From: Octopus bimaculoides
Taxonomy: Eukaryota
Direction of reading: 5' to 3'
Assembly (NCBI RefSeq): GCF_001194135.2
Contig: NC_069005.1
Span: 1,456,105-1,520,104, forward strand
DNA: 64,000 bases
The translations under genes were made by a program, and so were the position numbers. The stretch's first letter is position 1. Each line of letters begins with the position of its first letter. Positions 18,128-64,000 of the stretch are shown here, one piece after another. Below the pieces are notes generated by a model that worked only from the letters and a program-made list of their open reading frames with translations, searched no databases and was not told the origin of the DNA.

Positions 18128-18129
<2 letters not shown>

Positions 18130-18160
<31 letters not shown>

Positions 18161-45211: not shown

Positions 45212-45283
45212 NNNNNNNNNNAGATTTATATCACTGTCCAAATTTGCTTTTATCAAAAGAGAGGGACGGATGGACAGAGGAAT

Positions 45284-45327
<44 letters not shown>

Positions 45328-48300
45328 CATACATACATATCATCATCATCATTTAATGTCCACCTTCCGTGCTAGCATGGGTGGAACAGTTTCACAAGAG
45401 CTGGCTAAGCCGAAGCTTGCACCATACTTCTGTGACTGTTTTGGCAGGATTTTTACAGCTGGATGCCCTTCCTAACACCAGCCACTCAGCAGAGTGGACT
45501 TAGTGCTTTTTACATGGCACAAGCACAGGCAAGGTGAGTAGTGCTTTTTACGTGGCACCCACACACATCCATAAAGTAAACTTCTTTGCCACATCAGCCA
45601 CCAATGCAAGAAGACGTTTGGTTCCATGAACCAAGACTGAAAGCCTGTATTTCTGCTTTTAAGAATATAAGAGAAAGAAAATCGGAAGATAAAGAGGAGG
45701 AATACAACTCAATCAATAGAATACCTGTGTAGAATCCGAAGAAACATGTTAAGACAATTGGCCAGGATGAAACCAATGCTGCCAAGATAATGGGTGAAGA
45801 TCCAAGAGGCACTCAAGAAAGAAACGGAAAATATCAACATCATATTGTTGTACCTGAGAAATAAGAAAAGAGAAATCTGCATCTGACAAAATTTATTTTA
45901 TTTAGTTTTTTAAAGTTCTTCTTTAAATGTTTATTTTCTTCAATTATGTATTTTTTTCTTTTCTTTTATTTATTTTTTGCGTCAGTCATTGGACTATGGC
46001 CAAGCTGCAGCACTGGGTTGAAGGGTGGAGTCGATCAAATCAAGCTCAGAACATCTTTTTTTCCTCTAAATCTGGTATTTAGTTTATTGGCCTCTTTTAC
46101 CAAACTGCATGGTTGTCAGGCAGTGGCAGGGACAAACACAAAGACACATTAACTCCCAAAGAGTTGGTAGTTACAGTGACCTTTCCAGATATGTTCCAGT
46201 CTCATTAGACCTCATCAGTAGAGTAAAAAATGTTGATGCAAGATCTTAGAATAATTTCCAGAGGATAGACTTGGTGCAAAAAAAAACTACTGATGAGTTT
46301 AAACCGAGCAACATTAAGAAAATCCGTGTGATTGCTATGAAACGGTTAACTCATTAATAATGAGGTTAATGAGAAAAAGCCAATAAGTAGTGCTATCAAC
46401 AACAAATGAACTGAATAATCTAAACAAAGTTATCAGTGCTGAAAGGGGATGGAGATGAAAATAAGTAAAGAGAAATAGAATTCTATAAAAAGAAATCCAA
46501 CCAGATTTCGTAACTCACCGATCGACTTCTTTTTTGCTCATTACAGCAAACACAAAGGATTCTGAGACACCATTCACAGCAATGATTGAGACATAAACGG
46601 TATACCAGCGAAGAAGAACCGGACCTGGTAAAAGAATGAGACATCATAATCAGTCATTTCAAGTTTGTTTTCCCTGCTGATATAGACCAGATGTTTCAAC
46701 AGGATCCAGTGTCTTGAAGGACCAAGCCTTGCTCCAATGATTCACATTTGACATGGTTTCTACAGCCAGACGACCTTCCTAGTGCCAACCAATTTACAGA
46801 ATGGATTGAGTGCTTTTTCTTCTTTTTTTATATCATGGCACCAGCAAGAGTCCCTGAAACTGAAAGGGACAAGAGAGAGAAGGGGATGGCTTTGTGCAAT
46901 ACGTAAGCTTAAAATATGATACAAGAAACAGGAAGAGGTCATTGGGGTGTTGGACACAGGGTCGTGATTTCAATTCCCATACCATTGTGTTCTTGAGCCA
47001 AACACATCATTTCATATTGTTCCAGTCTACTTACCTGTAAATGGGTCATCCTGTGATGGATTGGCATACAAGGGTGAAACGAGGACTCAGGAAAATCACC
47101 TGAATGGTGGACTCATGGGCCATGTTTTATATTCAGCAATCAAAAGGATGAATGGTACAACCTGTACTGTGAACCCTGACTGGTTGGGATTCGAAGTTTC
47201 AATTTGAAATTAAGGAATTCTAAGAGGGAAAAAAATGTGCCCACGTTAATTTCTTTCTTTTTTGCTTACTTATTAGAAATTAAGAATTTTTAGCCAAAAA
47301 TGATTGTATCCAGTTGTAATAACACTTAAAAGAATTTAGAAATAGGAAAAAACTTATGTAGCCATGGAAATATGGATTAAAAGAGATGGTGAGAGAAAAT
47401 GAAAAGAGGAAAATGACCAGAAACCATTTCTTGTTACTGACCTAATGATGAGCTGAGCATTGGACCTCCATACATGTCCAATGCAAGGAAAGAATACGAA
47501 TAACCAAACACCAAGATAGTCAGCCCTATAAGAGTCACTCCAGTCAAGAGGATTCTTAATACAGTTGCTGCCATTCTTGCAGATTCCTGAAAATGAAAGA
47601 GTAGATTCTAAGGTCCACAGAACTACACACAAACATATCTGGATACATTTACAAATGTGCGCATCATCATCATTTCACATATGACAGGGATACTCATTTA
47701 CAGCTATTGTGTATGCAAAGTCAAGACAAGGAGACACAAACCTTTGTTTGTTGCTTCAGAGTTTTACCACGGAACAGCAGCTGAGAAAAAAACAGGTAAC
47801 TGCTCTCTTCTATGGGGCAAAAGAGAAACCTCGGTGCCAGTGAACCAAGATTATGAATGATGTCATAGATTCCTGTGAGAAAAAACAAAAATACAAACAT
47901 GTCAAATATTTTTTTTTTGTTTATTTAGTCAGTAATTCCTAGAACTGACTTCTTCTCAATTAATTAAAAATTTTTTCATCATATTTCATATGGTCTTGGG
48001 TTCAGTTCCACTGTGTGGCACCTTGAGCAAGTGTCTTTTAATAGAGCCCCTGATGAACCAAGGCCTTGTGAGGAGGGGATTTGGTAGACAGAAACTGAAA
48101 GAAGCCTGTTGTGTGTGTGTGTGTATGTCCCTGTCTTGACATCACACAATGGTTGTAGGTGAACATCACTACAAGCTATGGTGAACCTTTTCTAATCTTC
48201 AGTGGAAAACATGTCTAGCTATGGGGAAATACGATACCTAGAAACAGGCACCCCTAGACTAGGTTAGAGAAGTAACAGGCTATGATTTGAAGATAATATT

Positions 48301-49397
48301 CGAATTATTATAGGTTGACCCTTTGATATTAATCTACTTAAGACTGGCCCTGGTCTTATGATACTGATTCTCTGTTTTAAACTGATCTGAGCGAAAGCAT
48401 TCTGTTAAAACTTCATGTTCCAAACATTATTTGTCAATAATGACAAAGGAAGTGTATGTCTACAGAAATATAAGTAATAGCAGAGTGAAAGTGATCTAAA
48501 TAAACAGCTTCCATTTAAACTTCATGTCAGTTTATGTTCCAAACACCATCTTAAGAATAACAAAGTTTATTCTACAAAATTCTTCATTGTTTTAAAAAAT
48601 AATTGAAACAAAGTCATAAAAGTAAGCTTTGCAAACATATCGTGTTTTCCACTTACCTTGATCAGCAAAAGAGAGCACTTGGAAAAGAGTCATAACATAT
48701 TTCTCACCTGAAATAGAAAAACATTGCTTCTGTACCTTTTCAAAGCTATAAAAGTGGCTGAGATCAAACAAAATCAATCACTATGGCTAATAACTTTATG
48801 CTTGATAAGTAAACTACAGCAGAGTTTCAACAGTGGCACACACTGACAACAAAACTGCAACTAGCTTGAGCTGGTGCCATGTAAAAAGTGCCCAAGGGGG
48901 TGCCACATAACAAGTCCCCGTGCTGGTGCCAAGTAAAAGGCGCCCATCCTGGTGCCACATAAGTGTCTATGCTGGATCCACATAAATAACACCCATGTTG
49001 GCACCATGTATAAAGCACCCACGCTGGTGCCACATAAAAAGCGCCTGTGTTATTTATGTAAAAATGGATATTCTGTAAAATGGTCGGCATTAGGAAGAGC
49101 ATCCAGTCATAGAGACCATGCGAAAACAGACAACTGGAGTCTGGTGCAGCTCTCCAGTTCCATGCCAGCATGGAAAACGGACCTTAAATGATGATGATGA
49201 TGATGATCCATTTAGTAAGCTATAATTTTTTCACGTTAGCATGGGTGGTGGTGGTATTGGTGGTGGTAATGATAACGATGATGATGATGGTGACAATGGT
49301 GAATTACCTTCTGTAAGAATCTGTTTCAGGAAAGATTGCTTCATGAAGCTCCATGTCAAACTGGTCAAGTCTTTGTTAATAAAGGGCTACAAGATGG

Positions 49398-49432
<35 letters not shown>

Positions 49433-49596
49433 TACGTATATATATATCAGATATAATGTGTGTGTGTATATACATATATACACACACACACATATAGATA
49501 GATAGAAAGATAAATATAAATATAATATACATTCACTATATATGTGTGTGTGTCCAACCCATGCCAGCATGGACAATGGACATTAAATGACGATGA

Positions 49597-49643
<47 letters not shown>

Positions 49644-52600
49644 TATCGATAATATATATATATAATACAATGATGGCCTCTCCCATCATTAGACGGAGTA
49701 CATGCAGTGTTGCCAACTTAAAATCAGAATTTTATGCTAAATTGTCGACCCTGAGTACAAGACTTCTGCAATTTTTTGCTGAACAACGAAACAGTGGATT
49801 TGTTAATAGATAGCAACTGATTCTCTCCCTTTGATACTCCCAGCTTCTCGTCAACCGTTGTTGCCAGCGATCGTCACTTGACACGTTCTGTGTGCGAAAA
49901 GTTGTTCATAAACCGAAGTTCCATTGTATTTGTTTGCATCAAGTTTAACCTGGTGCAGCATCTTTCTACTGAAATTGTATCTATTCATTATATTCTATCG
50001 CTTGCTATAAATATTAATTAATTAATTAATCTATTCAGATTTTTTTTTTCAATATATACCATCTCCCACTTCATATATTTACTTGCTTTTAGAATTTTTT
50101 TATATCTCTTCTTATAAGTAGAGACCAACCCACCTGAGACCACCACCTCTGATAGTTTCAAATAAATCTAAACTAAACCCTTCCATTGAAATTTCATGTT
50201 AATCCGTGTAACAAACACCAGATTAATAATGACCAGGTTATTTTACCAAATTCTTTGCTATTTTCAAAATTCTCTACAACACAGGCAGCAGTGCATTTCA
50301 ACAGAAATATTTTAACAAAACTGTTAAAGTGGTCGAAGTTAAAACCTTCCACCAAAATTCCAAGTTAATTTATGTTCCAAACACCAGTTTAATAATGACT
50401 AAGTTATTTTATTAAATTCTTCATTTTGAAAACTAAATGAAACAAAAGCAGTGGATTTCAGTTGAGATTTGGCACCGAAAAGGTTAAGTGATCTTGAATC
50501 ACTTAGTCCCATACCTGGTTCTGAAGAAATTTTGGGAAAAAATCTCTGAATGTTTTCAATGGAAAATCTTTGTTTTCTTTCCGTCGTTGAATGTAAAATA
50601 TAAAGAAGACATAAAATGCTCCCACGTAGACCATCATGGAAACCACCTGGAAAAATAAAGAAATACAAGAGTAATGGTAAGGAATATTTCAAGACAGTGC
50701 ATCATATGGATAAATTCAAATGGCAGGAGTGTTCCTTATGTAACACCATAAGAATCGGAAAGCATTGGACAGAAACTATACAAAAGTTTCAAATTCTGGT
50801 ATAAAACCAGCAATTTTAGAGGAAGGAATAGTTTGCTTATATCGACCCCCAGCGCTCAACTGAAACTTATTTCATCAACCCCCAAAAGGGACAGTCAACT
50901 GCAGTGGAGTATGAACTCCAGAATGTAAAACCAGAAGAAATGCTGCTAAGCAGTTTTTCTAGCATGCTAACGATTCCTTCAGCTTACCATTTTTATATAA
51001 AACTATATAACAGACATGAATGAATGGTAAACAAATGTTATGTTGAAATATTTTAGGATAATGGCATTCAGACATGGCTGTGGAGTTAAAAGGTTTGCTT
51101 CCCAATCTTGTGTTTCAAGGTTCAGTTCTACTGCGTGATACCTTGGACAAGTGTTCCTCTTTTACTATAGCCCCAGGCCAACCAAAGCCTTGTGAGTGGA
51201 TTTGGTTCAGATATCAGTTTTGTGCTATCCAACTAAAGTTTGGAAGCCTTCATTTTCTGGTGCTTTCTTTCTATAAGAGGGATACCCTCTTCACCTAATT
51301 GGGTCTCCTTGACAAAGGGTCTTGCAAACCATTTGGCACTCCTGTTGTTTTCCATGCAATGACTTCTTGTTGAAGGAAACCAGCAGGGATCATGAACCAT
51401 CCAGGTTTTAACAAGACTGAAGAATGCTTTCTTCCTTTGTGGGTCTTGAAGTTCTGCTGATATTATGGAATCAATTTGATTGGAGAGCATGATATTCATT
51501 AACTACACCAAAACCATGTGCGCATGCACTCACACATACACAATAATATTCTATGTATATTCAGAGAGAATTAACGGTGATATCAGCTTACCTGAGCTAA
51601 TGAAAATATAATGAGTCCTAAATGTGGTTTATAGATAACGAGGAACATCGTTATGGCAGCTTTAACAATGAGAAGCAGGCCTTCCATTAACACCTGTAGA
51701 AAGATATTTATCATTATCATCATCAACATCATTATCATCATGTTTATGTTTATTTTTTCATGCAAACATGGGTTGGAACGGTTGTCATAGTCCAAGGAAC
51801 AGGGATCAGAATATAAATGGAATGGTAAAGGAAGGGAGAGAGAAAGGTGGTGGAAAGTGCTGGGGCATACCATCAAGGTATGGAGGGCACGATATAAGTG
51901 GGAGGGTATTGCCAAAGAAGCATAACAGTCAAGATTAGTGCAGTGACTGGTGAACATTAGGGTGTATAGAGGGGGTGGGGCAATACAGGATAGCAATGAT
52001 ACAGTGAGCAGGGTTGTGGGGACAGGATTGGGGAGTGAGAGATAAGCGTTGTGCATGAAGAAGAAATAGAAGGAAGAGAAGAGATGTAGTTTGGTTTGTT
52101 GGGGTAGGATGTGTGTGGAAGGTTTTATTGTTACGTGTGGGTGGAATACACAGAGCTTCTAGAACTGTTTTGCTGATGTGGGTGGATCATCTCAAGAACC
52201 TCATAGTGCCAGACATCTCAATCCATTGTCATTCCCTCCATGAGGCCCAACAACCTATATACATATATATATATATGTATGTATAGAGTGTTTGAAGTGG
52301 TGTACAAATCTTGTATATTGAGAATAAGAAGGCAGTCAGAATTTTGGCTAATTCTTTATTAGCGCTTTCATTGATTTATCAAACTTGTCAAAACACACAG
52401 ACACACACACACACACACACACACCAGGACTTCTGTGTAAAAGTCTTGCTAACAATAGTAACATTGGTAACTAATGTAGCATCATTAATTTTCATGGCAG
52501 ATGATGTTCCGATTCTACAGAGTTTATCATTGGCAACCTTTTACCATTTCACATTCCTGTCCTTTTCTAAGGGAGTCATTTTTAACAAGAAATTAAAACA

Positions 52601-53500
52601 CAATATCAATAAAAATATCTCTGATAGAAAGGTGCTAATTACTTACCTTAAGTTTGACAAACATAAACGCTTGTGTAATCACCCAGAGAGGTTGAGCAAT
52701 TACCTCAATGACTGTTGATGCAGCAAAGGCAAATACTCCTATACTGTAGTGAGGCACAATTAGGGGATCGGGTCTTTGAAGTAGGTGGAGCCATATTGCA
52801 CCCAAGACAGTGCTAGCAATAGCAGCACAAGGAACACTGGAAGCAAGGTGATGGTAAGTATACATTTATTAACTACAAAATTGAAAATAAAGGACAATTC
52901 TTAAGACACGTGGAACTTCAGAAAAGTAATTTTAATTCTGAAATAATAAATAAAATTGCATTGATGGTTATTTTCGCTATTTTAGACTGAAATAATCTTT
53001 ATTAGGATGAGAACTGACACACAAAGAAACTTGGAAGTAATGTAACAGTAAATATTGACTTGGTACGTACAAAATTTGAAAATATAGGGTAAATCTTAGG
53101 ATGTGTTGTGGAACTTTAGAGAATTAATGTTTGTATTGGAACAAATTCTGATTAAAAACACTCAGAAAAAGAATAATAAATAGAATTACATCTAAGAATA
53201 AGAAGACCTGTTTAAAGCAAGAATTTACAATATAAGCCTTCTGTTCTAACCGATTCTGATCTAACCGATTCATTAGATTAGTAGAGAGAATGATTAGATA
53301 CACATCGTCATTATGATTTTTAATGTTCACTTTTCCATGCTTGCATGGGTTGGACAGAATTTTCTGAAGCAAGTAGTTTCATAGCAATAAGGTGGTAAAG
53401 ACGTTTATCTATTAAGAATAAAAACACACAAAATGGCAAGAGACAAAGAACCAAAGACATGGAGACAACTGCTGAGCCTTGCTTTGGAAACAGAAGCAGC

Positions 53501-53539
<39 letters not shown>

Positions 53540-56062
53540 TTACTCACGTAAGCCACAACAAATTAATGACTTGTGTCCACGAAGTTTTCCCTGCATGACT
53601 CAAACAGGCTCGGTTGAACGCTTCCCGTGAAATAAATATACCAGTGCTGTACAGCAGAGTTAGTCTACAGGGGGAAAAGAAAAGAAACAAAACTTAAAAC
53701 AACATAAGGAGGTCACATGACCAATTCAAACAGTACAAAAGCAATGATGATGATAATGGAGACATTAATTTTAACTCCCTTCCATCATTTAGATGTGGTG
53801 AGGGTGGTGTAGACTCTTCCACTGAACAGTAGCTTAGTGGGATAAATATGGATTCATGTCCAAAGAATTGAAGGAAAAGGAGTTTAGGGGATCCATCCTC
53901 ATCAATTGATAATATATACACAATTACTCTTTTTTTATGATCTTAATATCACCTCAATGTCTTCAACACTTTATCTAAGTTATTTATGTGAACTATAATT
54001 ACAATAAAAATAATGATTATTATTTTAACATTAAACCAAACTAGCCACTGTGCTATTAAAAATCTAAAAAATAAATCACAGGTCCCTTCTGCTTTCAGCA
54101 CTTTTTTTATACAGATACACTCTCGAAGTGGTTGGCGTTAGGAAGGGCATCCAGCTGTAGAAACTCTGTCAGATCAGATTGGAGCCTGGTGCAGCCATCT
54201 GGTTCGCCAGTCCTCAGTCAAATTGTCCAACCCATGCTAGCATGGAAGGCGGACGTTAAACGATGATGATGATGATGATGATGATGTCATCTTCCAGACG
54301 CAACACCTGTTCCTACCTACACTATCCTCTCTTGATCAATATCTGATTTTGTTTATATAGATCACTTTCAAAGAAGCTTGTATCACGAAATTAGAGATGG
54401 CCACAATTGGATTCATATCAAAATAGTCAAACAACAAACAAAATATACAATGAGTCTTGCAAAATTTATAAATTATTACAAAATTATTAGAATTATCAAA
54501 CTTTTTTTATTTATAGTTGAAACAAGTAACTAACCTGACATTGACGACGCCCAGCATGTCCCGAGAGATGTAGTGAAGAATGAAGGCATTCAATATAAAT
54601 GTCAAAATCCTAGTGCTTAGCTGAGAAATAGACAAAGTGATGCAATTATTTTAAAGACATATTTGCATATTTAATAATGTCGTCTTTTACAAAAACTCAG
54701 CTGAGTGTATAGTCTTTCGGTATTGGTCTAACTTAGACAAGAAAGTTCTAGCATTCTAGACTTCATCATAATGGATTAATAATGTAGAAGAAACAGTTCT
54801 AGTTCCAAAATTATGGTAAAGATTTAGTGGACTGTTCCACTAAACAAAAATCATTCACCTACCAGTTGTCATAATTGTATGTCACCTTTTCTCTCTCTAT
54901 CTCTCCCCAACCATTATAATACCCGAAACAGACTTCTGCATTCATTCTAGGGTCAACACTGGCGAGACGTCACTAAATATCGGTTTCAAATTTTGGCAGA
55001 AGCCCAGCAATTTCGGGGTGGATGGAGTGAAGTCGACTACATCGACCCCAGGGTTCAACTGGTAATTACTTTAACCCCCACGAAACTATCGAACTCAGAA
55101 CGTGAAGACGGAGGAAATGTTGCTAAGCATTTCGCCCGGCGTGCTAACGGTTCTGCCAGCTCACCGCCTTTTAGGGACGTAACTGAATATTCTTTTCTAC
55201 TCTAGACACAAGGCCCGAGATTTTGGGGGAGAGGGCGCCAGTCGATTAGATCCATCGCAGTACGCAACTAGTACTTATTTATCGACCCCGAAAGGATGAA
55301 AGGCAAAGCCGACCTCGGCGGAATTTGAATTCAGAACGTAACGGCAGACGAAATACTGCTAAGCATTTCATCCAGCGTGCTAACGTTTCTTATTTCTTTA
55401 TTGCCCACAAGGAGCTAAACATAGAGGGGACAAACAAGGACACACAAATGGATTAAGTCGATTACATCAACTCCAGGGCGTAACTGGTACTTAATTTATC
55501 GACCCCGAAAGGATGAAAGGCAAAGTCGACCTCGGCGGAATTTGAACTCAGAACGTTGACGTTTCTGCCAGCTCACCGCCTTACGCAACTAAATATTGCG
55601 GGATATTTGATTCAAAACTCGGTCGTTTCTTCTACTTTACAGTGAAATTTATTTTAACCATTTAAAATGTCATATTTAGACACAACATCAACAACAAAAT
55701 AACTTCAATTTTGTAAGTAAACTTCGAGAAAGCATAACTGTAATTTTAATGTAAACAAAAAGCAGCAGTTGTTACATTATAAAAACAAAATAACAGATAC
55801 AAGTAAAACTAATAATTGAGTTCCTGGTCCCCAATCGGGGAATATATTCGTTAATTCTATAATCCATTGATATTAATTTAATTCCAAATATGCAAAGGAT
55901 TAAGACAGTGCGCGTACATTCGTAAACACGTATGAAGTAAATTGGAACGAAACCGGTTCGCGAAGAAAGAAGTATCGTAAATAAAGTGATATTTAATACC
56001 TGAAGAATAATATTATAGGATGCGGCTTTAGCAGCCCCTGAGAGTAGATTTGAAGCTTTCAT
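44248..56062 (-). CDS. RFT1: Protein RFT1 homolog (Man5GlcNAc2-PP-dolichol translocation protein), 14 coding exons: complement(join 44248-44436,44815-44935,45725-45853,46519-46624,47442-47586,47742-47872,48657-48707,49308-49386,50515-50646,51592-51693,52647-52836,53548-53664,54535-54620,56000-56062)
   Basis: Exons joined by hand give 1641 nt = 546 aa + stop with consistent phases and GT-AG at every junction. The translation aligns end to end with RFT1 as recalled (e.g. [80 protein letters not shown]). Confidence 0.96.
44815..44935 (-). CDS. RFT1: RFT1 coding exon 13 ([41 protein letters not shown])
   Basis: ttgcag acceptor, GTGAGT donor; 121 nt. Confidence 0.93.
45725..45853 (-). CDS. RFT1: RFT1 coding exon 12 ([43 protein letters not shown])
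   Basis: tttctcag acceptor, AG|GTATT donor (read-through hits a stop within 4 codons); 129 nt. Confidence 0.93.
46185..46223 (-). ncRNA. Degenerate hammerhead motif in RFT1 intron 11 (sense strand)
   Basis: UCUA-CUGAUGA-GGUCU(AAUG)AGACU-GGAA-CAUAU-C^UGGA; all helices present, but GAAA reads GGAA. Confidence 0.5.
46519..46624 (-). CDS. RFT1: RFT1 coding exon 11 ([35 protein letters not shown])
   Basis: ttaccag acceptor, GTGAGT donor; 106 nt. Confidence 0.96.
47442..47586 (-). CDS. RFT1: RFT1 coding exon 10 ([48 protein letters not shown])
   Basis: ttttcag acceptor, GTCAGT donor; 145 nt. Confidence 0.96.
47742..47872 (-). CDS. RFT1: RFT1 coding exon 9 ([44 protein letters not shown])
   Basis: ctcacag acceptor, GTTTGT donor; 131 nt. 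Confidence 0.96.
48657..48707 (-). CDS. RFT1: RFT1 coding exon 8 ([17 protein letters not shown])
   Basis: tttcag acceptor, GTAAGT donor; 51 nt. Confidence 0.96.
48860..49050. repeat. Degenerate about 25-bp minisatellite (GCTGGTGCCACATAAAAAG-like) upstream of an RTE-type tail in RFT1 intron 7
   Basis: About 7 imperfect units. Confidence 0.7.
49308..49386 (-). CDS. RFT1: RFT1 coding exon 7 ([26 protein letters not shown])
   Basis: cttgtag acceptor, GTAATT donor; 79 nt. Confidence 0.96.
50515..50646 (-). CDS. RFT1: RFT1 coding exon 6 ([44 protein letters not shown])
   Basis: tttttccag acceptor, GTATGG donor; 132 nt, phase 0-0. Confidence 0.9.
51240..51500 (-). mobile_element. Helitron Rep fragment in RFT1 intron 5
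   Basis: [29 protein letters not shown]...[29 protein letters not shown] matches the Helitron [34 protein letters not shown] pattern. Confidence 0.82.
51592..51693 (-). CDS. RFT1: RFT1 coding exon 5 ([34 protein letters not shown])
   Basis: tctacag acceptor, GTAAGC donor; 102 nt. Confidence 0.96.
52647..52836 (-). CDS. RFT1: RFT1 coding exon 4 ([30 protein letters not shown]...QAFMFVKLK)
   Basis: ttccag acceptor, GTAAGT donor; 190 nt. Confidence 0.96.
53548..53664 (-). CDS. RFT1: RFT1 coding exon 3 ([38 protein letters not shown])
   Basis: pyrimidine tract + tgtag acceptor, GTGAGT donor; 117 nt. Confidence 0.96.
54121..54287 (+). repeat. RTE-type 3' tail ending in (GAT)n; further copies in RFT1 introns at about 45340-45500(-), 49080-49210(+), 49555-49600(+), 51720-51785(-), 53300-53360(-)
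   Basis: GGAAGGGCATCCAGCTGTAGAAAC...CCAACCCATGCTAGCATGGAAGGCGGACGTTAAACGATGATG. Confidence 0.8.
54535..54620 (-). CDS. RFT1: RFT1 coding exon 2 ([29 protein letters not shown])
   Basis: tttctcag acceptor, AG|GTTAG donor; 86 nt. Confidence 0.95.
54985..55585 (-). mobile_element. Three tandem, same-orientation family-A SINE copies in RFT1 intron 1
   Basis: ATCGACCCC..GAAAGGATGAAAGGCAAAG.CGACCTCGGCGGAATTTGAA.TCAGAACGT at about 55281 and 55499; an internally deleted copy at about 55040. Confidence 0.85.
56000..56062 (-). CDS. RFT1: RFT1 coding exon 1 ([21 protein letters not shown])
   Basis: ATG at 56062, CAG|GTATT donor; 63 nt. Confidence 0.92.
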
Positions 56063-57569
56063 CTTTCTTTAAATATCAGTAGTTTTTGGTTAATATTGAA
56101 AAGTTTAAACGAGAAAAACACTCCGATAACTTCCATGTTGTTGGAAGATCGCTTAACACATAGTGTCAATATTAAAATTTTAACATATTTCTTTTTACAA
56201 AATTAAAAAAAGGAAAACAAAGAAATATAAAATTTAAAATATTTAATAGAAATTTAAATTTGTAAATAATTCTTCACTAGCCAGTACTTATATTTAGCCA
56301 ACCTTTTCAGAGTACATAAGCGATGTTTCAATTAAGGAAGTACTTTACCCAGGGAAAACTTGTTTTGTTGTCGTTCTATTTAAATGGAAATTCTTTTTTT
56401 TTACGAAAGGCAAACATCATTTATTTATTAAATACAGTATTCATGGAACGAAACAAAAAAATTATTTCTTTAACTGTAGGCGTTAGCTTCGCTGTGTAAT
56501 TAAATTCGCTAAGCAACAAGTTTTTTGGGTTCACTTGCCCAAGGTACCACTATGTGACACTTTGGGTCAGTGTCTTTTACTATAGGTCTGGGTCAACTAA
56601 TACTTTATTTCTAAGGGGATTTGATATGCAAAACTACACACACACACACGTGTGTGTGTGTGCCTCAAATTCGACTTAGTTCAGAATATCCGGGGGTGTT
56701 CGTCACTGAGGAGACCAAATGAGATCGCATCACCGTATCTAACGATCCACCTCAACATACTGAGAGCGACTTGGATGTTTTTTTAAATGGCCTTTTGCAA
56801 AGTTTGTCTGTGAATAAATATTACAGCTAGCGCTGTTCTACGATTGCATATATACATTATAAATGTTATACACACCGCCGTTCTAATCTAATTCTGTTTT
56901 AAGTGCTGGGATATGCTCCAGCTATGCAAGTCATGCATGACCACTGGATTGAAGGGATCTCCTATTCTGACCATTTCCCATCCCGTTAAAAATAGCTTCG
57001 AACCTCCTTATCTGTCAGTTTTTTTGTAATTGGTGTCGCTAAAGACTGACCACATGGCTTAATGGATTTGGCCTCAGTCTAAAAATAAAAACCTTTTCAA
57101 AATTCTTAGTCAAATCGGCTTTGCCAATTGAACAAAATTATTCATTTTCTCTTTGATATTTAATGTTCGTTGTTACATTCCTGGACTTTTTTTTGATTTT
57201 TGATTATCTGACCCAAGTTGGAATTTCTCCCTTTTGACCAGGAAAAACCGGAATGTGTAATCTTTGTTCATGTATTAATCTTAGTTAAGCATGCTCTGCT
57301 ATAAAAGAATGCAAGATATTTTTTCGACAATAAATGGACTGGGTGCATTTTTTATGAAATCGCCTAGAAGGGCTGATGTGGTTAGGTAACATAGTTTAAA
57401 AAAGATTCCCCAAAGCTGCAGGAACTGCATGGAACTAATCCTCATATCTTGTTCTTACTATAAAAGAAAATTGTAATAGAGGAGACATAGAAAGAAAATC
57501 ATAGAGATGGTGTCTAGTTTTCACATTGTGGGACAGACAGACAGAATCTCCCTTTTATATATATAGATG

Positions 57570-57880
57570 TCATGTGTTGCTTTTTGTACTTGGTTTGCAA
57601 GATTCTTGATGTGAATTTGTGTGTTGAAACATTTTGTTGTTATAATTTCTGTTCCTTCTCTGGAACTTTCTGTTTCTTGTTGGTAGAGATCACCATTTTG
57701 TCACTATTGACATTTTTTTGGCCATCTTGAAACGTCTGAACCACTTCTACCCCTGTGTGTGGCTCATACACTTTCTGCAACTTTGCGTAAGCTTCTGAGC
57801 AAGTATCGCCATGACAACTTTCTCTGTCATGGTCAATGCAACAATTATGCTACTTCGAAGCACTGGTGTAAACAGCGGAA
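57570..57880 (-). mobile_element. Mariner N-terminal fragment
   Basis: GDTCSEAYAKLQKVY..SHTQG*KWFRRFQDG resembles the mariner HTH. Confidence 0.65.
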
Positions 57881-60318
57881 GTGAGCTAGAACGTTAAAAT
57901 TTGGTGCACGTGCACAGCAGAGTTCAAGGTCAATCTGTGCCATGCAGCTTCACTCTGCATGCTTTAGCTTTGTTACTATGGCAAAAGTCTGGATACTTAT
58001 TGTTCAGACTATATTCTATGTTGTACCATTTTTCTTTGATGCTCTTTCATTTGACTTAGGTATTTAAAATCTTTGTGGCATTTCTGATCTTTCTCATATC
58101 TTACAATGGATATCAATGTCTATGAGTTTTTTTTTTCAGATGTAACTCTGGGGGACAAAAAGGCAAATTTGGTGCTCGAATGTTGTTTTTCACGTGTCAC
58201 TAGCACCTTTGGTCTAAACTATATTAAGAAAGTAATGTTTTAAATTGTCAAGAATAAGTTATAAAAATGCCAGTGTGGAACCTGAAATGAAAGAGAAAAC
58301 TGCCAAAAAAGTAGCAGTAGATGAATTGAATGAGGTCAGTGAGAAATCAAAAGAGCAAATATGAGGCAAGCAATTTGATGCAGAAGTGGTCTAATTCCAT
58401 TCACATTTTCAAGTCCACTTGTAAATCAGGCCTCAGGTACACTTGATGCCACCATGACAAACCAAGCATCAGATGGCCAGCTTGGCACTGCCTTGGAAAG
58501 TTTGGTTAAAGGAAAACAAAAAGATGGATGCTTGAGTCACATTCAAAGTTATTTCTTTGGATTAGTCGTGTCACATTCAAAGTTATTTCTTTGGATTAGT
58601 CGTGTCACATCAACGACACACAACCACCATCCTCTACCATCAAAATGACAGCATTTTACATCATTTGAAAAATGGTACTTAATAGATGCATCAAATATAT
58701 ACACTTCATATATTTGATATAGAATAATTGAATATTTTATTGAAAATACTTTGAAGGATTGGATCCAAAGAAAACAAAATATGAGGGAAATTTTTATATA
58801 AATTGTTTTAATATTTTACTGAGGTTAATAGAATAAAATTTCTTTATTTAAAGGTTACAGATTCCCCATCTGTTATTTTATTAAATTGCTGGTCAATCTG
58901 CATCATAAAAGTATCAGTAATTCACACACACACACACACAAGTTATTCATATTCATGATTTATACAAAGAATTACAAAGAAAGTCTGTGGAGTTTACTGC
59001 TCACAGTTGAGTTTGGTTTATATGTGGATAAAATCCCCAATGAAATCCCTTCAAAAGTGTTTATCCCTGGAAACAGTTGAACTCCTGTCCATTTTTATGA
59101 GTTCTACTGCTCAACCAGGAGATGGAAATATTATGTAAACAATAAATGTGAAAGTGCTGTTCCAAAATTGCAAGGCACAGTGTGTCAGAGAGAACGAAGA
59201 TGGCGGTGGAGGGGGAACAAGCTCAACATGATTGTGTGTGTGTGTGTGTGTGAGAATCGTCATCATTTTAACATCCACTTTTCCACATTTGCATGGGTTA
59301 ATGTGTGTGTGTGTGTGTGTGTGTGTATGTCTGTGTGTGTGTGTGTATCTATGGTGTTAAATACTTACGTCTGCATGCATATATGCATAGGAGTATATGT
59401 ATACATAGTGAGGGCACATGACCTAGTGGTTAGGGTGTTGCACTTACAATTATGAGATCGTAGGTTCAGTTCCCGGGCTGGCCGAGGCATCGTGTTCTTG
59501 AACAAAACATTTCATCTCTCATTGCTCTGCATGACATAACACACCTGACATGTGGTATGTCGTGCATCCACCTGTACGAGCAATGTATACACAAGTCTAG
59601 GCTATGAGAACAATTTGCTTTGAAACCAGGTGGTTTTGTGTTCTACCTCACTGCCCAGTACCCTTGGGCAAGTGTCTTCTACTGTGCTAGTAACTGGAAT
59701 TAGATGGAAACTGTATGGAAGCCCATTGTTTGTGTGTGTGTATATATATAATGGCTGACGACTAGCATCATGCTTGAAATTCAAGATTACCAACGAATTG
59801 GAATCAAACTGTTTTTATCCATATATATATATATATACACACACACATACATATGCATGTATATATAGTGTTTTTGTGCTTAGATATTCTTGGATATGAA
59901 AGGTGTTTGTTTTGATTATATTTCGAAATATGTGTGCTTGTACAGGTGAGATTGTAACATTGACTAATCAGGACTCACAAATACATTTAGTATATTTAGT
60001 ACAATACAGTTTCAAACAAACATATCAACCCCTAAGTACACAAATCTGATTAAGTACCTGGCAAAATTACCTGACTGTTAGCAGCAATGTCAGACAAATC
60101 TCAATGAGATTTACCTGACAGTAATTAGAAAATGGTAGTCCACTGGTGGTGTAGTGGCCTTCATCAGTTGTAATTTACATAGAAATAAATCAAAGAATCC
60201 CTGCTTGAAACAACAATCTCTCTTTCATCTCATCACACATCAAACCTTTTCTTCAAGATTTAGTCTTTCTCACAAAGACAGGCGTTTGAGGTTTTTTTTG
60301 CCTCCTTTTTGTTCTGAA

Positions 60319-63222
60319 TCATGCCTCACTTATGAATTCATTATCTTTCAAAACAGAAAATGTTACTTCACTTAGTTTCATTGGTTCATAAGTGAAATCA
60401 TCACTCAACAATACGGCCAGTGTAGATCCTCGTTCTGATTTCAAATCTTTGAATTTCCGTATGGCATCATATTGCCTTTGGCTTGTGTCTATGCCTGTCG
60501 TAGGTACTCCAGGGGTCAATATATGGGAAAATGGGTAAACAGTCTCCAGGAAACTATCTATAAACATTTTCTTATGGGTGTTGCTGTCCCGTCGAGCTGT
60601 TCGACTCCTCTCTTTCTGCTTCTCAATCCAAGTGTCACGAAGTAATTGCATCATGTCAAATTGATCTGCAACCAAAGGGAAAGATGCCAAAACCGAACTC
60701 GATATCAGCTCCGTGTTATCTGAATCGATTCTGTCTCGTAGGAGAGCCTTTGCCAGAATGTTCCGGTACAATGCATAAAAATGCATCAGGCACACGTTAC
60801 CAATGATGGTATGAGGTAAACTGTTTAAAACATCTTTCTGTTCTTTTTTGGGAGGGAAAACTTTGACCACTAATGTTGGCTTTTGGTGCCCAGTAAAAAG
60901 ACTAAGAAAGGAATTCTCTTCAACTGCATTTGAAAACCTGGAATCAAGAGGAATACCTCTATCATAGGGAGTTCCACCATGAAGGGGCAATTCATAAGTA
61001 CGGTTTGTCATGGTTTCTTCAGATAATAAAAGCTTAGTCCAACCACAACTGAATATTCCTTGTTCCTGGGTGTCTTGTTGGGTATATGACAGACACAGCT
61101 CAAACAGTAAATTTATCTGATTCCCTGAGTAATTTGTTCTCACAAAGAATTCTGTATGTAAACTGACATCCATATTATCGGAGACACGAGAAGAAAAATT
61201 CCAAGACTTTTGAGATTTATCAACTGATTGCACTTTGATTGTGTGTATGTTACTCAAGACATTTTTCCCATCAAAAATACAAACTCGTATGCATCGACAC
61301 TGGACATCAATACCCGGACCTGTTTGTGGAATGTTCCGGCAAGACTGAATACTCACAATTTTTAAAATATTTACACTATAAGGACAAATTTGTTTGTCTG
61401 ACGGAGAGTAAAACAAATCTGTATAGCTCATTGCTGTTTTACTCAAGGACGGATGAAGTGCTTTCTCCATGCGATACTCCGAGTTGGCAGCCCATAAACT
61501 ACTCAGAGTAGAAGGTCGGAAACCAGATGGCACGGTACCTTTTGCTTGAAGAACATCAACAATGGATTGTTCTTGAATTGATTCTTTGATAGTTTGCCAA
61601 AGTTGTTTAGCAGAACGAGTTTTTGGTTTATCTCCTCCACTCTCCACTTTCACATCTTCATCTATATCTGAGTCTTCTTCCTCTTCATTTTCTTTCTCTT
61701 CTTCCTCAGAGTTATCATCACTGTCACTTTCTCCTTCGTCTTTTCTTGATTCTTCAGCGCTATCCTCTTCTTCCTCCTCCTCATCATCAGTAGGAGACCT
61801 CATCTGCAGATAGGTGCTGGGCACCAGGCCTTGAAAACCATCATTATTCTCAGCAAGCCACCAACCATTTCGATGGGCCTGCACTATTTTTAGAACTTCA
61901 CCTTTCTTAAAACTCAGATCACTTGTCTCTTCTTTCTCATAATTTGATAATGCAATAAAATACTTCGTAGGAAGTTCCATTTCTTCATCAGACTCCTCCT
62001 CCTCCTCCTCCTCATCATCATCTTCCTCATTTGTAGAATCCTCTTTTTCCTCATCCACTTTACTCAGCTCCTCCTCTGCCTCTTCTTCATCAGACTCCTC
62101 CTCCACCTCTTCTTCATCTGACTCCTCCTCCTCCTCCTTCTTTCCTTCATCTTTCTCCTCCTTCTTTCCTTCATCTTCCTCTTCCAAGAGTTCCTTAGTT
62201 TTCGAAGGTAATTTCTCTTTATGATGAAGATTATGTTTCAAAACTGATTTCATGTCAGCGATTAACTTTGATTTCAAACCTTTCTTCTTCTGGTTGGTCA
62301 CGGAACTTTCACTTTCTGTGGTTGTTGCTGCTGCTGCTTGTCCCTCGTGAGGATCTGGCGTGGGAACAACTTGAGTGGGGCTTTTCTCAGATTTCGATTT
62401 CTGATTCAAAATTTTCGACTTGGATTTCGAAGAAGAATGGCTACTTTTAAAAGACTTTACCTTACCAACATCTTCATCCTCTGTAACTGCAACGCTAGTA
62501 CTACTAGCTGGGCCACTCGTGCTAGCAGTGGCACTAGTACTAGCTGCGCCCTCTTCTTCCTCTTCGTCATTATCATCCTCTTCATTGTCACCATCGTCTT
62601 CATCGTCGTCGTCATCATCATTGCTTTCATCACACTCGTCCACATTTTCAGATATATCTTCGTTTATTTCTTTTTCAGAATCTCCTGCAATACTTTTCCC
62701 GGAAATGGTGCTTCCAGACTGGGAATCTCTCTTACTACTGTTATTATTGTTTTCTTTCTTCGATCGATTTTGCTTCTCAGAAATCTCCTTTTGCTTTTTC
62801 TTTGTCGTGATGCGTTTCGCTGCCGCCTTTTCCCCCGTATCTCTATCCTTGGTACTTTCAACTTTTCTGCTAACTTCGCTTTCTTCTGGTGTTGTTTGTT
62901 GAACAATAACATCGTAAGTATCTGATACTAGTTTCTGTTGGGTGGCCACTTTTTTTAGAAGGCTCTTTTTCTTGGAATCGAAATTCTTCTGTTGCTTCGG
63001 ATCTTTATTTTCAAGTAAATTAATTTCCTTCGTTAAACTTTCCAGCTCGTTCGCTAAACTTTTACATTCTTCGCTTAACGCCGAAACATTTTCCGACTCC
63101 TTGACGTCCGGATTCAACTTCTTAAACTTTTTAAACTTCTTTAGAAACAAATCTGTATCTTTTTTTAATTTATCATACGAATTCGATAAAGTCTGAAGCG
63201 CAACTGGTGTCTTGCCCAACAT
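60319..63222 (-). CDS. NPHP1: Nephrocystin-1, single-exon ORF (967 aa from ATG at 63222)
   Basis: N-terminal coiled coil, acidic tracts, SH3, then the nephrocystin homology region with motifs matching NPHP1 as recalled (VDVLQAKGTVPSGFRPSTLS, VCIFDGKNVLSNIHT, LLFELCLSY, SCGWTKLLL, TYELPLHGGTPYDRGI, LPHTIIGN, YEPMKLSE). The ORF-track start is a TTG at 63255; the first ATG (MLGKTP) aligns with the NPHP1 N-terminus. Confidence 0.95.
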   Translation of the reverse strand: MLGKTPVALQTLSNSYDKLKKDTDLFLKKFKKFKKLNPDVKESENVSALSEECKSLANELESLTKEINLLENKDPKQQKNFDSKKKSLLKKVATQQKLVSDTYDVIVQQTTPEESEVSRKVESTKDRDTGEKAAAKRITTKKKQKEISEKQNRSKKENNNNSSKRDSQSGSTISGKSIAGDSEKEINEDISENVDECDESNDDDDDDEDDGDNEEDDNDEEEEEGAASTSATASTSGPASSTSVAVTEDEDVGKVKSFKSSHSSSKSKSKILNQKSKSEKSPTQVVPTPDPHEGQAAAATTTESESSVTNQKKKGLKSKLIADMKSVLKHNLHHKEKLPSKTKELLEEEDEGKKEEKDEGKKEEEEESDEEEVEEESDEEEAEEELSKVDEEKEDSTNEEDDDEEEEEEESDEEMELPTKYFIALSNYEKEETSDLSFKKGEVLKIVQAHRNGWWLAENNDGFQGLVPSTYLQMRSPTDDEEEEEEDSAEESRKDEGESDSDDNSEEEEKENEEEEDSDIDEDVKVESGGDKPKTRSAKQLWQTIKESIQEQSIVDVLQAKGTVPSGFRPSTLSSLWAANSEYRMEKALHPSLSKTAMSYTDLFYSPSDKQICPYSVNILKIVSIQSCRNIPQTGPGIDVQCRCIRVCIFDGKNVLSNIHTIKVQSVDKSQKSWNFSSRVSDNMDVSLHTEFFVRTNYSGNQINLLFELCLSYTQQDTQEQGIFSCGWTKLLLSEETMTNRTYELPLHGGTPYDRGIPLDSRFSNAVEENSFLSLFTGHQKPTLVVKVFPPKKEQKDVLNSLPHTIIGNVCLMHFYALYRNILAKALLRDRIDSDNTELISSSVLASFPLVADQFDMMQLLRDTWIEKQKERSRTARRDSNTHKKMFIDSFLETVYPFSHILTPGVPTTGIDTSQRQYDAIRKFKDLKSERGSTLAVLLSDDFTYEPMKLSEVTFSVLKDNEFISEA
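61801..61968 (-). other. SH3 domain within NPHP1
   Basis: YFIALSNYEKEETSDLSFKKGEVLKIVQAHRNGWWLAENNDGFQGLVPSTYLQM shows the canonical SH3 signatures (ALY-like, DLSF.KG, WW, GLVPS.Y). Confidence 0.97.
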
Positions 63223-64000
63223 TATTACGCCTGTGTATGTAGAAGTTGGGCGCAAGTTTGTGTACGAATATATGAATGAATAAACGTGGATGCTCGCGCC
63301 AATGTATGTCTTTATATGTCTGTGTGTGTGTGTATCTATCTATATATATGTGTGTGTGTGGATCTATCTGTTCGTATTAACATTCTTTACAAAAACTCGA
63401 ACAAAGTTTACACGTTGTTAAGGCGAAGCGTTATTAACAACGCGCCACCTACAGGAAAGAAAGCAAACCGAAAAGAATAAAAGGAGGAGGTAAGGCCGAG
63501 TGGAAAATAAAACGTTAAATCAAAGGGAGGTAATTTGGTTAATTATTTTCGCCCTTTTAAAAAATGCGTCTGGAATGGAAGTGACAAATAATAGATTAAA
63601 AAGGGGCGGTCTTCGAGTTTACGCGTTCACTTTCTCAAGTTAACATGTAGCTTCTCTCCTTTGTTTGGTTGTTGGTGAAAATGGAGAATGTGTGCGTGTG
63701 TGTGTGTATGTATGTATGTACAGTATATATATATATATATATATATATATGGTGGTGGTTGTCTACTCCTTAAACAGAGTTTGACCACCTCCTGCACCTA
63801 CATCTTAGCCCTTTCATGGCGTCTGATGTGGCTTTTTAAACCAGACAGTGTTTTGAAAAAACACCCACACAGATTGCACCTCTGATTTGCACTACCAATA
63901 CCTGCAAGTAAGTTCTGCTCATTGTGGATCCTAACATGTCTTTTAAGACCCCCATTGGATTTGCAAACCCTCTGGCATACACCACATTCAAACGTGTGCA

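What the first reader, a model, noticed from the sequence alone, without database searches (positions are those of the whole stretch)
60319..63222. Intronless NPHP1 next to an intron-rich RFT1
Seen: the whole nephrocystin-1 homology (coiled coil, SH3, C-terminal domain) is in one 2904-nt open frame. Established: vertebrate NPHP1 has about 20 exons, and cephalopod genes usually retain ancestral introns, as RFT1 does 4 kb away. Inference: a retrocopy that inserted upstream of RFT1 and stayed intact, possibly replacing the parental gene, or wholesale intron loss through cDNA recombination. This affects a core ciliary transition-zone gene. No clear poly(A) scar or TSD is visible (only an A8 run about 20 nt after the stop), which implies an old event.
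Basis: partly seen in the sequence, partly recalled or inferred. Interest (0 to 1): 0.7.

Follow-up and report, generated by a model that had tools for sequence, protein, structure and literature searches.

The report
Intronless octopus NPHP1 gene, likely retrogene
The octopus version of the cilium gene NPHP1 sits in one uninterrupted 2.9-kb exon, although other molluscs and vertebrates split it into 20-29 exons; it probably arose from a reverse-transcribed mRNA and still looks functional, which is a tidy new example of a known process rather than a new kind of thing.

Summary
Confirmed. Window 60319-63222 (minus strand) is one 2,904-nt ORF encoding a full-length nephrocystin-1: helical N-terminus, acidic linker, SH3, acidic linker, C-terminal homology domain. 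The window is Octopus bimaculoides chromosome CM046625.1, where the public gene model is also single-exon.

NPHP1 has 27 coding exons in a chiton, 29 in a snail and 20 in a gar. Twenty-four intron positions are shared in phase by at least two of these (14 by all three). Octopus has none of them. RFT1, 4.3 kb downstream, keeps its first four introns at the whale-shark positions.

The ORF looks maintained. Comparison with a cuttlefish transcript shows the codon-position pattern of purifying selection, and one of only three CpG islands in the 64 kb straddles its ATG. There is no poly(A) tail or target-site duplication.

Best reading: an old RNA-mediated event, most likely a retrocopy that replaced its parent ("orphan retrogene"). 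Intron loss in place by recombination with cDNA is the main rival. Exon-junction signatures hint that the loss predates the octopus-cuttlefish split.

Not testable here: RNA-seq across the locus, a second spliced locus, gene structure in other cephalopods.

Verdict: real, a new member of a known kind, modest interest.

The parts
60319..63222 (-). Complete NPHP1 (nephrocystin-1) coding sequence in a single exon: 967 codons plus TGA stop (60319-60321)
   Evidence: ORF list. Public gene model at GCA_001194135.2 CM046625.1 is the same single 2,904-nt exon. Homology to NPHP1. End-to-end alignment.
62878..63222 (-). N-terminal helical (coiled-coil type) domain, aa 1-115
   Evidence: Aligns with the N-termini of mollusc, nemertean and vertebrate NPHP1. 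AlphaFold model gives helices 8-36, 44-72 and 81-110 at pLDDT about 80-90.
61963..62877 (-). Long disordered K/S-rich and E/D-rich linker, aa 116-420, about 100-200 aa longer than in other molluscs; contains imperfect 9-33-nt tandem repeats
   Evidence: Alignment. pLDDT below 50. Tandem repeats at 61993-62185 and 62550-62607. No in-frame stop although the other sense frames have 1-20 stops per 300 nt.
61804..61962 (-). SH3 domain, aa 421-473
   Evidence: Pfam SH3_1 E 2.2e-13. Matches the solved human nephrocystin SH3 structure 1s1n. Model pLDDT about 85-89.
61633..61803 (-). Second acidic disordered linker, aa 474-530
   Evidence: Alignment. pLDDT below 50 for 482-533.
60322..61632 (-). C-terminal nephrocystin homology domain, aa 531-967 (beta-sandwich plus helical part)
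   Evidence: 42-45% identity to mollusc NPHP1 and about 34% to vertebrate NPHP1. 56% identity to the Sepia esculenta transcript. Model pLDDT mostly 75-95.
62751..63750 (.). CpG-undepleted island straddling the start codon; putative own promoter and 5' end of the transcript (inferred)
   Evidence: CpG o/e 1.1-1.8 in 250-nt windows, against a window median of 0.72 and 0-0.6 in the intergenic DNA. It is one of only three such islands in the 64 kb; another covers the RFT1 5' end.
60292..60299 (-). A8 run 19 nt after the stop codon; too short and too close to the stop to count as a poly(A) remnant
   Evidence: Sequence. The Sepia transcript has more than 400 nt of 3' UTR and no such run.
56063..60318 (-). 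NPHP1-RFT1 intergenic DNA (includes the unknown 3' UTR): microsatellites, a SINE-like segment, a 34-nt tandem duplication. First canonical AATAAA signals lie about 1.4 kb after the stop (about 58840-58885). No poly(A) tract and no flanking direct repeats.
   Evidence: Sequence. Repeat scans.
52647..56062 (-). Comparator: first four exons of the neighbouring RFT1 gene (about 56000-56062, 54537-54617, 53547-53666, 52647-52835), with introns of about 1.4, 0.9 and 0.7 kb at ancestral positions. A later exon lies at about 47440-47571.
   Evidence: Gene call. Pfam Rft-1 matches. Coordinates and splice flanks. Boundaries coincide with whale-shark RFT1.

Best explanation
This is the working NPHP1 gene of Octopus bimaculoides. 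Its whole coding sequence is one exon because it descends from a reverse-transcribed, fully spliced NPHP1 mRNA.

Most likely a retrocopy landed between a P2X-receptor gene and RFT1. There it came to be driven by a CpG-island promoter directly at its 5' end, took over the function, and the multi-exon parent was lost (retrogene replacement, an 'orphan retrogene'). The event is old, probably older than the octopus-cuttlefish split, so the poly(A) tail and target-site duplications have eroded. The protein kept the full nephrocystin-1 architecture while its disordered linkers expanded and its sequence evolved faster than in other molluscs.

Shown: the single-exon structure, orthology, ancestral intron richness, intact domains, the selection signature, and the CpG island.

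Inferred: the RNA intermediate, the relocation, loss of the parent, the age, and promoter use.
For: - Orthology: full-length collinear NPHP1, placed within Mollusca as sister to the Sepia sequence.
- Ancestral intron richness: chiton has 26, snail 28 and gar 19 coding introns, all resolved as GT-AG. Twenty-four positions are shared in phase by at least two of the three (14 by all three), and octopus has none.
- This is not a genome-wide habit: RFT1, 4.3 kb away, keeps its ancestral introns.
- Not an assembly artefact: the ORF is in the same gap-free 18.8-kb stretch as the RFT1 exons.
- Maintained by selection: octopus vs Sepia gives pN 0.30 against a saturated pS of 0.79, with codon-position identity 60/77/39%. 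A neutral insert of 300 nt or more would carry an in-frame stop with P > 0.99.
- Promoter-like CpG island at the ATG.
- The exon-end 'AG|' signature has decayed to background in octopus: 3/22 against 30/63 in the references, p = 0.004. It is equally low in Sepia: 1/15 against 15/41, p = 0.025.
- No shared neighbours with the chiton or snail NPHP1 loci within 10 kb.
- No second cephalopod-like NPHP1 among the 78 best hits of an exhaustive search of 1.84 billion representatives.
- Precedent: retrogene replacement (PMC5803294, PMC3548309), intronless retro-derived SP6-9b/c in cephalopods (PMC7661307), and LINE ORF2 remnants in this very window.
Against: - No poly(A) tract, no target-site duplication and no recognisable parental 3' UTR end. 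The classical hallmarks of retroposition are therefore absent, and have to be explained by age.
- A native-looking CpG-island promoter directly at the ATG is what intron loss in place would leave. A retrocopy does not carry its promoter.
- Relocation is not demonstrated. Only 10 kb of flank could be compared in two distant molluscs, and coleoid cephalopod genomes are reported to be heavily rearranged (my own knowledge, not checked here).
- Absence of a parental locus could not be tested on the genome.
- The protein searches returned no Octopus-genus proteins at all, not even the query's own record, so their silence about a second copy is weak evidence.
- No octopus transcript data could be examined.
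- An assembly gap lies only 778 bp upstream of the ATG.
Confidence: 0.5

Rival explanations
1. Intron loss in place. The original multi-exon NPHP1 locus was converted by homologous recombination (gene conversion) with a full-length cDNA of its own mRNA, erasing all coding introns while keeping the native promoter and position.
For: This rival naturally explains three things: there never was a poly(A) tail or target-site duplication; a proper CpG-island promoter sits directly at the ATG; and no second locus shows up in the protein searches.
Against: It requires one event, or a long series of events, to remove at least 24 introns spread over what is a 32-38 kb gene in other molluscs. From general knowledge, cDNA-mediated intron loss in animals usually removes a few adjacent, 3'-biased introns, and fully intronless orthologues are normally traced to retrogene replacement (PMC5803294). 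The neighbours differ from those of chiton and snail NPHP1, though that comparison is shallow.
Confidence: 0.28
2. An expressed retro-duplicate whose multi-exon parent still exists elsewhere in the octopus genome. The window copy would then be an extra paralogue, possibly with a specialised role.
For: The genome itself could not be searched. The homologue searches returned no Octopus proteins at all, so they cannot exclude a parent. Cephalopod SP6-9b/c are retro-derived copies that coexist with their intron-bearing parent (PMC7661307).
Against: Among the 78 strongest of 1,454 hits in 1.84 billion representatives, only the Sepia fragment is cephalopod-like; the others group with gastropods, bivalves, deuterostomes and so on. 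The octopus protein is a singleton at the 90% clustering level. Only one NPHP1 transcript type was recovered from four Sepia RNA-seq runs. The full domain set is under constraint.
Confidence: 0.1
3. Not truly intronless: the gene model hides one or more short in-frame introns in the low-complexity linker, or has introns in its untranslated regions.
For: No RNA evidence could be examined. The linker (aa 116-420) is 100-200 aa longer than in other molluscs. A neutral in-frame insert of 100 nt or less would escape the stop-codon test (P about 0.14-0.30). UTR introns cannot be assessed at all.
Against: Every 300-nt window of the ORF lacks in-frame stops, while the other sense frames carry 1-20. 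Local introns are 0.7-1.4 kb, and inserts of that size would carry stops. The conserved domains align without insertions. The CpG island abuts the ATG, which argues against a distant first exon. Even if true, all 24 ancestral introns are still absent.
Confidence: 0.08
4. Artefact: cDNA contamination or a mis-assembly placed a processed NPHP1 sequence in the scaffold.
For: A 1,007-nt assembly gap begins 778 bp upstream of the ATG, and the window holds 16 N-runs.
Against: From 45222 to 64000 there is no gap. The ORF is physically continuous with 4.3 kb of typical octopus intergenic repeats and with RFT1 exons. About 550 bp of non-coding, CpG-island DNA and microsatellites precede the ATG. There is no poly(A) at the 3' end. 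The same model persists in the chromosome-scale v2 assembly.
Confidence: 0.02

Closest known systems
Amphioxus SYCP1 retrogene replacement (Garstang & Ferrier 2018, PMC5803294)
   Same: [quoted passage not shown] It is interpreted as a retrocopy that replaced its parent.
   Different: For SYCP1, absence of the parent was shown by genome and transcriptome searches in three species, the UTRs were mapped, and promoter co-option from the neighbour CHIC was supported. None of that could be done here. NPHP1 lies head-to-tail with its neighbours, so it does not share a bidirectional promoter with them.
'Orphan' retrogenes of vertebrate genomes (Ciomborowska et al. 2013, PMC3548309; Carelli et al. 2016, PMC4772013)
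   Same: Intronless functional genes whose intron-bearing parent has been lost. The hallmarks have eroded with age, and promoters are often CpG-rich.
   Different: A different lineage (cephalopod mollusc) and gene. NPHP1 is not reported as intronless in the searched literature.
Cephalopod SP6-9b and SP6-9c intronless paralogues (PMC7661307)
   Same: [quoted passage not shown]
   Different: Those are additional copies beside an intron-bearing SP6-9a. The octopus NPHP1 appears to be the only copy, that is, an orthologue replacement.
Reverse-transcriptase-mediated intron loss by recombination of cDNA with the genomic locus (classical yeast model; my own knowledge)
   Same: It would give precise deletion of introns, no poly(A) or target-site duplication, and a retained native promoter, all of which are seen here.
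   Different: It usually removes a few adjacent 3' introns. Here all 24 or more ancestral coding introns are gone, including those in the first 75 codons.
Nephrocystin-1 (NPHP1) family of ciliary transition-zone proteins
   Same: Same domain order (helical N-terminus, acidic stretch, SH3, acidic stretch, C-terminal homology domain). 34-45% identity across bilaterians.
   Different: It is the longest of the sequences compared (967 aa against 650-850), owing to expanded disordered linkers. The branch shared with Sepia is long: 43-48% identity to other molluscs, which are 54-69% identical among themselves.

Membership tests
Nephrocystin-1 (NPHP1) orthologue | SH3 domain flanked by glutamate/aspartate-rich stretches | tested here: met
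   Pfam SH3_1 at aa 423-469, E 2e-13. Matches the human nephrocystin SH3 structure 1s1n. Acidic runs on both sides.
Nephrocystin-1 (NPHP1) orthologue | C-terminal nephrocystin homology domain | tested here: met
   aa 531-967 align over 98% of the query with named nephrocystin-1 proteins, E down to 6e-138. Confidently folded in the model. No Pfam model or solved structure exists for this domain.
Nephrocystin-1 (NPHP1) orthologue | N-terminal coiled-coil/helical domain | tested here: met
   Collinear alignment of aa 1-115 with orthologues. Three long helices at pLDDT about 80-90. No dedicated coiled-coil predictor was run.
Nephrocystin-1 (NPHP1) orthologue | Phylogenetic position consistent with the species tree (orthologue, not a distant SH3 protein) | tested here: met
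   A neighbour-joining tree on 439 columns places octopus plus Sepia inside the lophotrochozoan/mollusc group. No bootstrap was run.
Nephrocystin-1 (NPHP1) orthologue | Localises to and functions at the ciliary transition zone | not testable with these tools
   Inferred from orthology only.
Retrocopy / processed gene | Lacks all introns of the parental gene | tested here: met
   None of 24 ancestral in-phase intron positions is present; the references have 19-28 introns.
Retrocopy / processed gene | 3' poly(A) tract | tested here: not met
   Only an A8 run 19 nt after the stop. No A-rich tract after any AATAAA in 4.3 kb.
Retrocopy / processed gene | Flanking target-site duplications | tested here: not met
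   The direct-repeat scan of 58300-64000 finds only microsatellite and low-complexity families.
Retrocopy / processed gene | Genomic location different from the parental locus | tested here: inconclusive
   ORFs from the 10-kb flanks of chiton and snail NPHP1 have no match in the window or its upstream 10 kb. The comparison is shallow and the parental locus in cephalopods is unknown.
Orphan retrogene / retrogene replacement | No intron-bearing parental copy left in the genome | not testable with these tools
   No genome-wide search was possible. The only indirect evidence is that there is no second cephalopod-like NPHP1 among the top representatives and the protein is a singleton cluster.
Orphan retrogene / retrogene replacement | Copy is functional (selective constraint, expression) | tested here: inconclusive
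   Constraint is met and there is a CpG-island promoter signature. Expression in octopus could not be tested. The Sepia orthologue is transcribed in larvae.

The most novel reading that the evidence does not exclude
NPHP1 was retro-replaced once, in the stem of coleoid cephalopods (or of all cephalopods), so every octopus, squid and cuttlefish runs a core transition-zone gene from a processed copy under a newly recruited promoter. The shared long branch and expanded disordered linkers would then reflect re-tuning of the transition-zone module after relocation, and the single-exon state would be a rare genomic change that marks the clade.
Probability: 0.3. Interest if true: 0.45.

Novelty: new member of a known kind. 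Interest (0 to 1): 0.35.

Why it matters
NPHP1 is a conserved ciliary transition-zone gene and, from general knowledge, the commonest cause of juvenile nephronophthisis in humans. Its exon structure is otherwise very stable: 14 intron positions are shared in phase by gar, chiton and snail.

A lineage in which the whole gene has been swapped for a processed copy is useful in three ways:
- It is a clean natural experiment on how a retrocopy acquires the regulation of a ciliary gene.
- It adds a documented case of retrogene replacement in lophotrochozoans, where few are described.
- It offers a possible clade marker for cephalopod phylogeny.

Practically, it tells annotators that this single-exon model is genuine and not a processed pseudogene. 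It does not change any general concept.

Tried and rejected
- **Cephalopod orthologues via the search for homologous proteins:** three searches returned no Octopus-genus protein, not even the query's own record. Only a Sepia fragment came back. The RFT1 query, meant to fetch other cephalopods' RFT1 loci and read their upstream 10 kb, gave only vertebrate fragments.
- **Sepia contigs L004-L007 as genomic evidence of intronlessness:** rejected. Run SRR31864756 is larval RNA-seq, so these are transcripts.
- **P0123 (UniParc, 43% identity) as a possible second octopus copy:** rejected. It nests within heterobranch gastropods.
- **JGI metagenome scan for stray cephalopod DNA:** nothing found.
- **RFX X-box upstream of the ATG:** there is no strict match. 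The best candidate (63414-63427) has one mismatch, and the degenerate pattern occurs at chance frequency (6 seen, 6.6 expected). It gives no evidence either way.
- **Target-site duplication and poly(A) search:** only microsatellites.
- **Synteny with chiton and snail flanks:** no shared genes, but the flanks are only 10 kb.
- **Rfam scan of 56-64 kb:** only sub-threshold mir-297/466 matches on TG/TA microsatellites. ARAGORN found no tRNA.
- **Fold search of the model against the PDB:** only SH3 domains and weak PLC-gamma matches, so no solved relative of the C-terminal domain.
- **PWM version of the junction test:** octopus and Sepia both score above random same-phase positions, probably because conserved codons carry part of the signal. 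I therefore rely on the comparison with intron-bearing references, not on the null.
Full report
**What is there.**
Window 60319-63222 on the minus strand is a single open frame of 2,904 nt: ATG at 63222, TGA at 60319-60321. The frame stays open to a TTG at 63255, but orthologue alignment begins at the ATG. It is not a chance ORF. The coding frame has no internal stop, against 29-113 stops in the other five frames, and the longest ORF in 15 kb of adjacent gap-free DNA is 191 aa.

An exact-sequence look-up identifies the locus as Octopus bimaculoides GCA_001194135.2, chromosome CM046625.1. There the public gene model is the same single 967-aa exon. It lies between a P2X-receptor gene (upstream, beyond the window) and RFT1 (downstream), all on one strand.

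**What it encodes.**
- Pfam recognises only the SH3 domain, aa 421-473.
- The C-terminal 550 aa hit hundreds of proteins named nephrocystin-1. The best are molluscs (Haliotis 42% identity, 98% coverage, E 6e-138); vertebrates are about 34% identical.
- A multiple alignment shows the octopus protein is collinear with NPHP1 from end to end: N-terminal helical region, acidic stretch, SH3, acidic stretch, C-terminal homology domain.
- An AlphaFold model built on 36 orthologues gives three long N-terminal helices (8-110), an SH3 barrel (420-474) and a well-folded beta-sandwich plus helical C-terminal domain (535-960, mostly pLDDT 75-95). Disordered linkers span 113-417 and 482-533.
- The PDB fold search recovers only SH3 domains, including human nephrocystin 1s1n.

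The first linker is 100-200 aa longer than in other molluscs and contains imperfect 9-33-nt tandem repeats.

**Is the intronless state unusual?**
I fetched the genomic loci of three orthologues and mapped their exons exactly.
- The chiton Liolophura sinensis has 27 coding segments over 38 kb.
- The snail Biomphalaria glabrata has 29 over 32 kb.
- The gar Lepisosteus oculatus has 20 over 15 kb.

All 73 introns resolve with GT-AG boundaries. Twenty-four positions are shared in the same phase by at least two of the three species, and 14 by all three, so they date to the bilaterian ancestor (a looser count within two alignment columns, ignoring phase, gave 16). The octopus ORF has none of them.

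As an in-locus control, I located the first four exons of RFT1 at about 56000-56062, 54537-54617, 53547-53666 and 52647-52835, with a later exon at about 47440-47571. Their boundaries coincide within one residue with those of whale-shark RFT1. The neighbour therefore keeps ancestral introns, of 0.7-1.4 kb.

**Is it an artefact?**
The window has 16 N-runs but none between 45222 and 64000. The ORF is physically continuous with 4.3 kb of typical octopus intergenic DNA (microsatellites, a SINE-like segment) and with the RFT1 exons. A 1,007-nt gap begins immediately beyond position 64000, 778 bp upstream of the ATG. No other NPHP1-like piece exists in the window or in the 10 kb upstream.

**Is it functional?**
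One closer relative could be retrieved: a 281-aa fragment (P0127) carried on four run-assembly contigs that are 99.8-100% identical to each other. One of the runs, SRR31864756, is listed in the data statement of a Sepia esculenta larval RNA-seq paper. So these are cuttlefish transcripts. They show the orthologue is expressed, but they say nothing directly about introns.

The longest contig (1,781 nt) is collinear with octopus aa 534-959 at 56% identity, and it groups with octopus on a shared long branch. Over 437 codons, pN is 0.30 against a saturated pS of 0.79, and identity by codon position is 60/77/39%. That is the signature of purifying selection.

One caveat applies. If the octopus copy were young, most of that constraint would have accrued in the parent. 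The complete absence of retroposition scars argues against youth.

A neutral in-frame insert of 300 nt or more would carry a stop with probability above 0.99, so hidden introns of the size seen next door are excluded. Short in-frame introns, or introns in the UTRs, are not.

A CpG-undepleted island (o/e 1.1-1.8, window median 0.72) straddles the ATG at about 62751-63750. Only three such islands exist in the 64 kb, and another covers the RFT1 5' end. This suggests that NPHP1 has its own promoter immediately upstream.

**How did it arise?**
Precise, simultaneous absence of every ancestral intron points to a spliced-RNA intermediate. Two routes remain.

(a) Retroposition to a new site followed by loss of the parent. 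This route has clear precedent (PMC5803294, PMC3548309). Cephalopods have other retro-derived intronless genes (PMC7661307), and LINE ORF2 remnants lie in this window. The chiton and snail NPHP1 flanks share nothing with the octopus locus. However, the defining scars, a poly(A) tract and target-site duplications, are absent, and the relocation is not demonstrated.

(b) Conversion of the original locus by its own cDNA. This route would never have produced scars and would keep the native promoter, which fits the CpG island. But erasing at least 24 introns across a gene of tens of kb in place is, from general knowledge, much rarer in animals.

I put (a) at about 0.5 and (b) at about 0.28. A parent still present elsewhere gets about 0.1. 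Indirect evidence against a surviving parent is as follows:
- In an exhaustive search of 1.84 billion representatives, only the Sepia fragment among the 78 strongest hits is cephalopod-like.
- An unnamed 43%-identical UniParc protein proved to be gastropod.
- The octopus protein is a singleton at the 90% level.

This evidence is weak, because the word-indexed searches returned no Octopus proteins at all.

**How old is it?**
Direct evidence is unavailable, so I used an indirect test. Exons that are still spliced end in 'AG' much more often than chance. At the ancestral junctions the counts are chiton 13/23, snail 9/22 and gar 8/18, and three of the four mapped octopus RFT1 donor-side exon ends are also 'AG'. 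The octopus NPHP1 ORF shows 3/22 (Fisher p = 0.004 against the references).

At the 15 junctions covered by the Sepia transcript, the references show 15/41. Octopus shows 1/15 and Sepia 1/15, against a background expectation of about 1 (Fisher p = 0.025). Sepia thus looks like the known-intronless octopus. This suggests, but does not prove, that the loss predates the octopus-cuttlefish divergence.

A position-weight version agrees in ranking. It also shows both cephalopods above random positions, probably because conserved codons carry part of the signal.

**Comparison with what is known.**
The gene is a bona fide NPHP1 orthologue. Its mode of origin fits the known category of retrogene replacement (orphan retrogenes). 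The closest described analogue is amphioxus SYCP1, a single coding exon of about 3.2 kb next to the ParaHox cluster.

No paper in the searched library links NPHP1 with intronlessness, and none describes NPHP1 or retrogene replacement in octopus. It is therefore a new member of a known kind.

**Verdict.**
The mechanism is narrowed to two RNA-mediated routes, with retrogene replacement favoured. Interest is modest (0.35).

The decisive tests could not be run here. They are genome-wide tBLASTn in octopus and other cephalopods, and transcript mapping across 56-64 kb.

Noticed in passing
L004 519-521 and L005 about 350-395 (Sepia esculenta NPHP1 transcript contigs): The two contigs that cover the codon aligned to octopus 'DKSQKSW' are each disrupted. 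L004 has an in-frame TAA where L005 has GAA, and L005 has a 1-nt deletion plus a substitution about 40 nt upstream. Contigs L006 and L007 begin just 3' of this spot. Each disruption rests on a single contig, so it is unresolved whether these are assembly errors, alleles, or the start of gene decay in cuttlefish.
   Followed up: partly
window 63799-64000 (minus strand); L001 8216-9222: The tail of a C2H2 zinc-finger ORF (two fingers, Pfam E 8e-11) ends about 575 bp upstream of the NPHP1 ATG. It is cut by a 1,007-nt assembly gap that starts right beyond the window end. No gene is called there in the public annotation.
   Followed up: partly
window 17001-18250: The third CpG-undepleted island of the window (o/e 1.25-1.42) has no recognisable ORF of 35 aa or more. 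It may be the 5' end of an unannotated gene or a non-coding transcript beyond or within the RFT1 region.
   Followed up: partly
window 18389-18994 (-), 38723-39097 (+), 30765-31085 (-): Transposon remnants lie downstream of the RFT1 5' exons. Two are LINE ORF2 C-terminal fragments (zf-RVT, below Pfam's cut-off) and one is a helix-turn-helix, transposase-like ORF. They show that reverse-transcriptase-bearing elements have been active at this locus.
   Followed up: partly
window 63412-63440 (minus strand): An 8-bp inverted repeat, GTTGTTAA...TTAACAAC, lies about 200 nt upstream of the ATG. It encloses an X-box-like TTCGCCTTAACAAC that is one mismatch off the RFX consensus. It is not statistically distinguishable from chance.
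   Followed up: partly
window 58536-58603: A perfect tandem duplication of a 34-nt unit lies in the NPHP1-RFT1 intergenic DNA.
   Followed up: no
window about 59420-59500: A tRNA-like, SINE-looking segment (GGTTCAGTTCCCGG-type box on the plus strand) is flanked by (TG)n/(CA)n microsatellites. ARAGORN calls no tRNA there.
   Followed up: partly
protein level: octopus and Sepia NPHP1 against other molluscs: Cephalopod NPHP1 sits on a long shared branch. It is 43-48% identical to other molluscs, which are 54-69% identical to each other. So the protein's evolution accelerated in the cephalopod lineage, whether or not that relates to the intron loss.
   Followed up: partly
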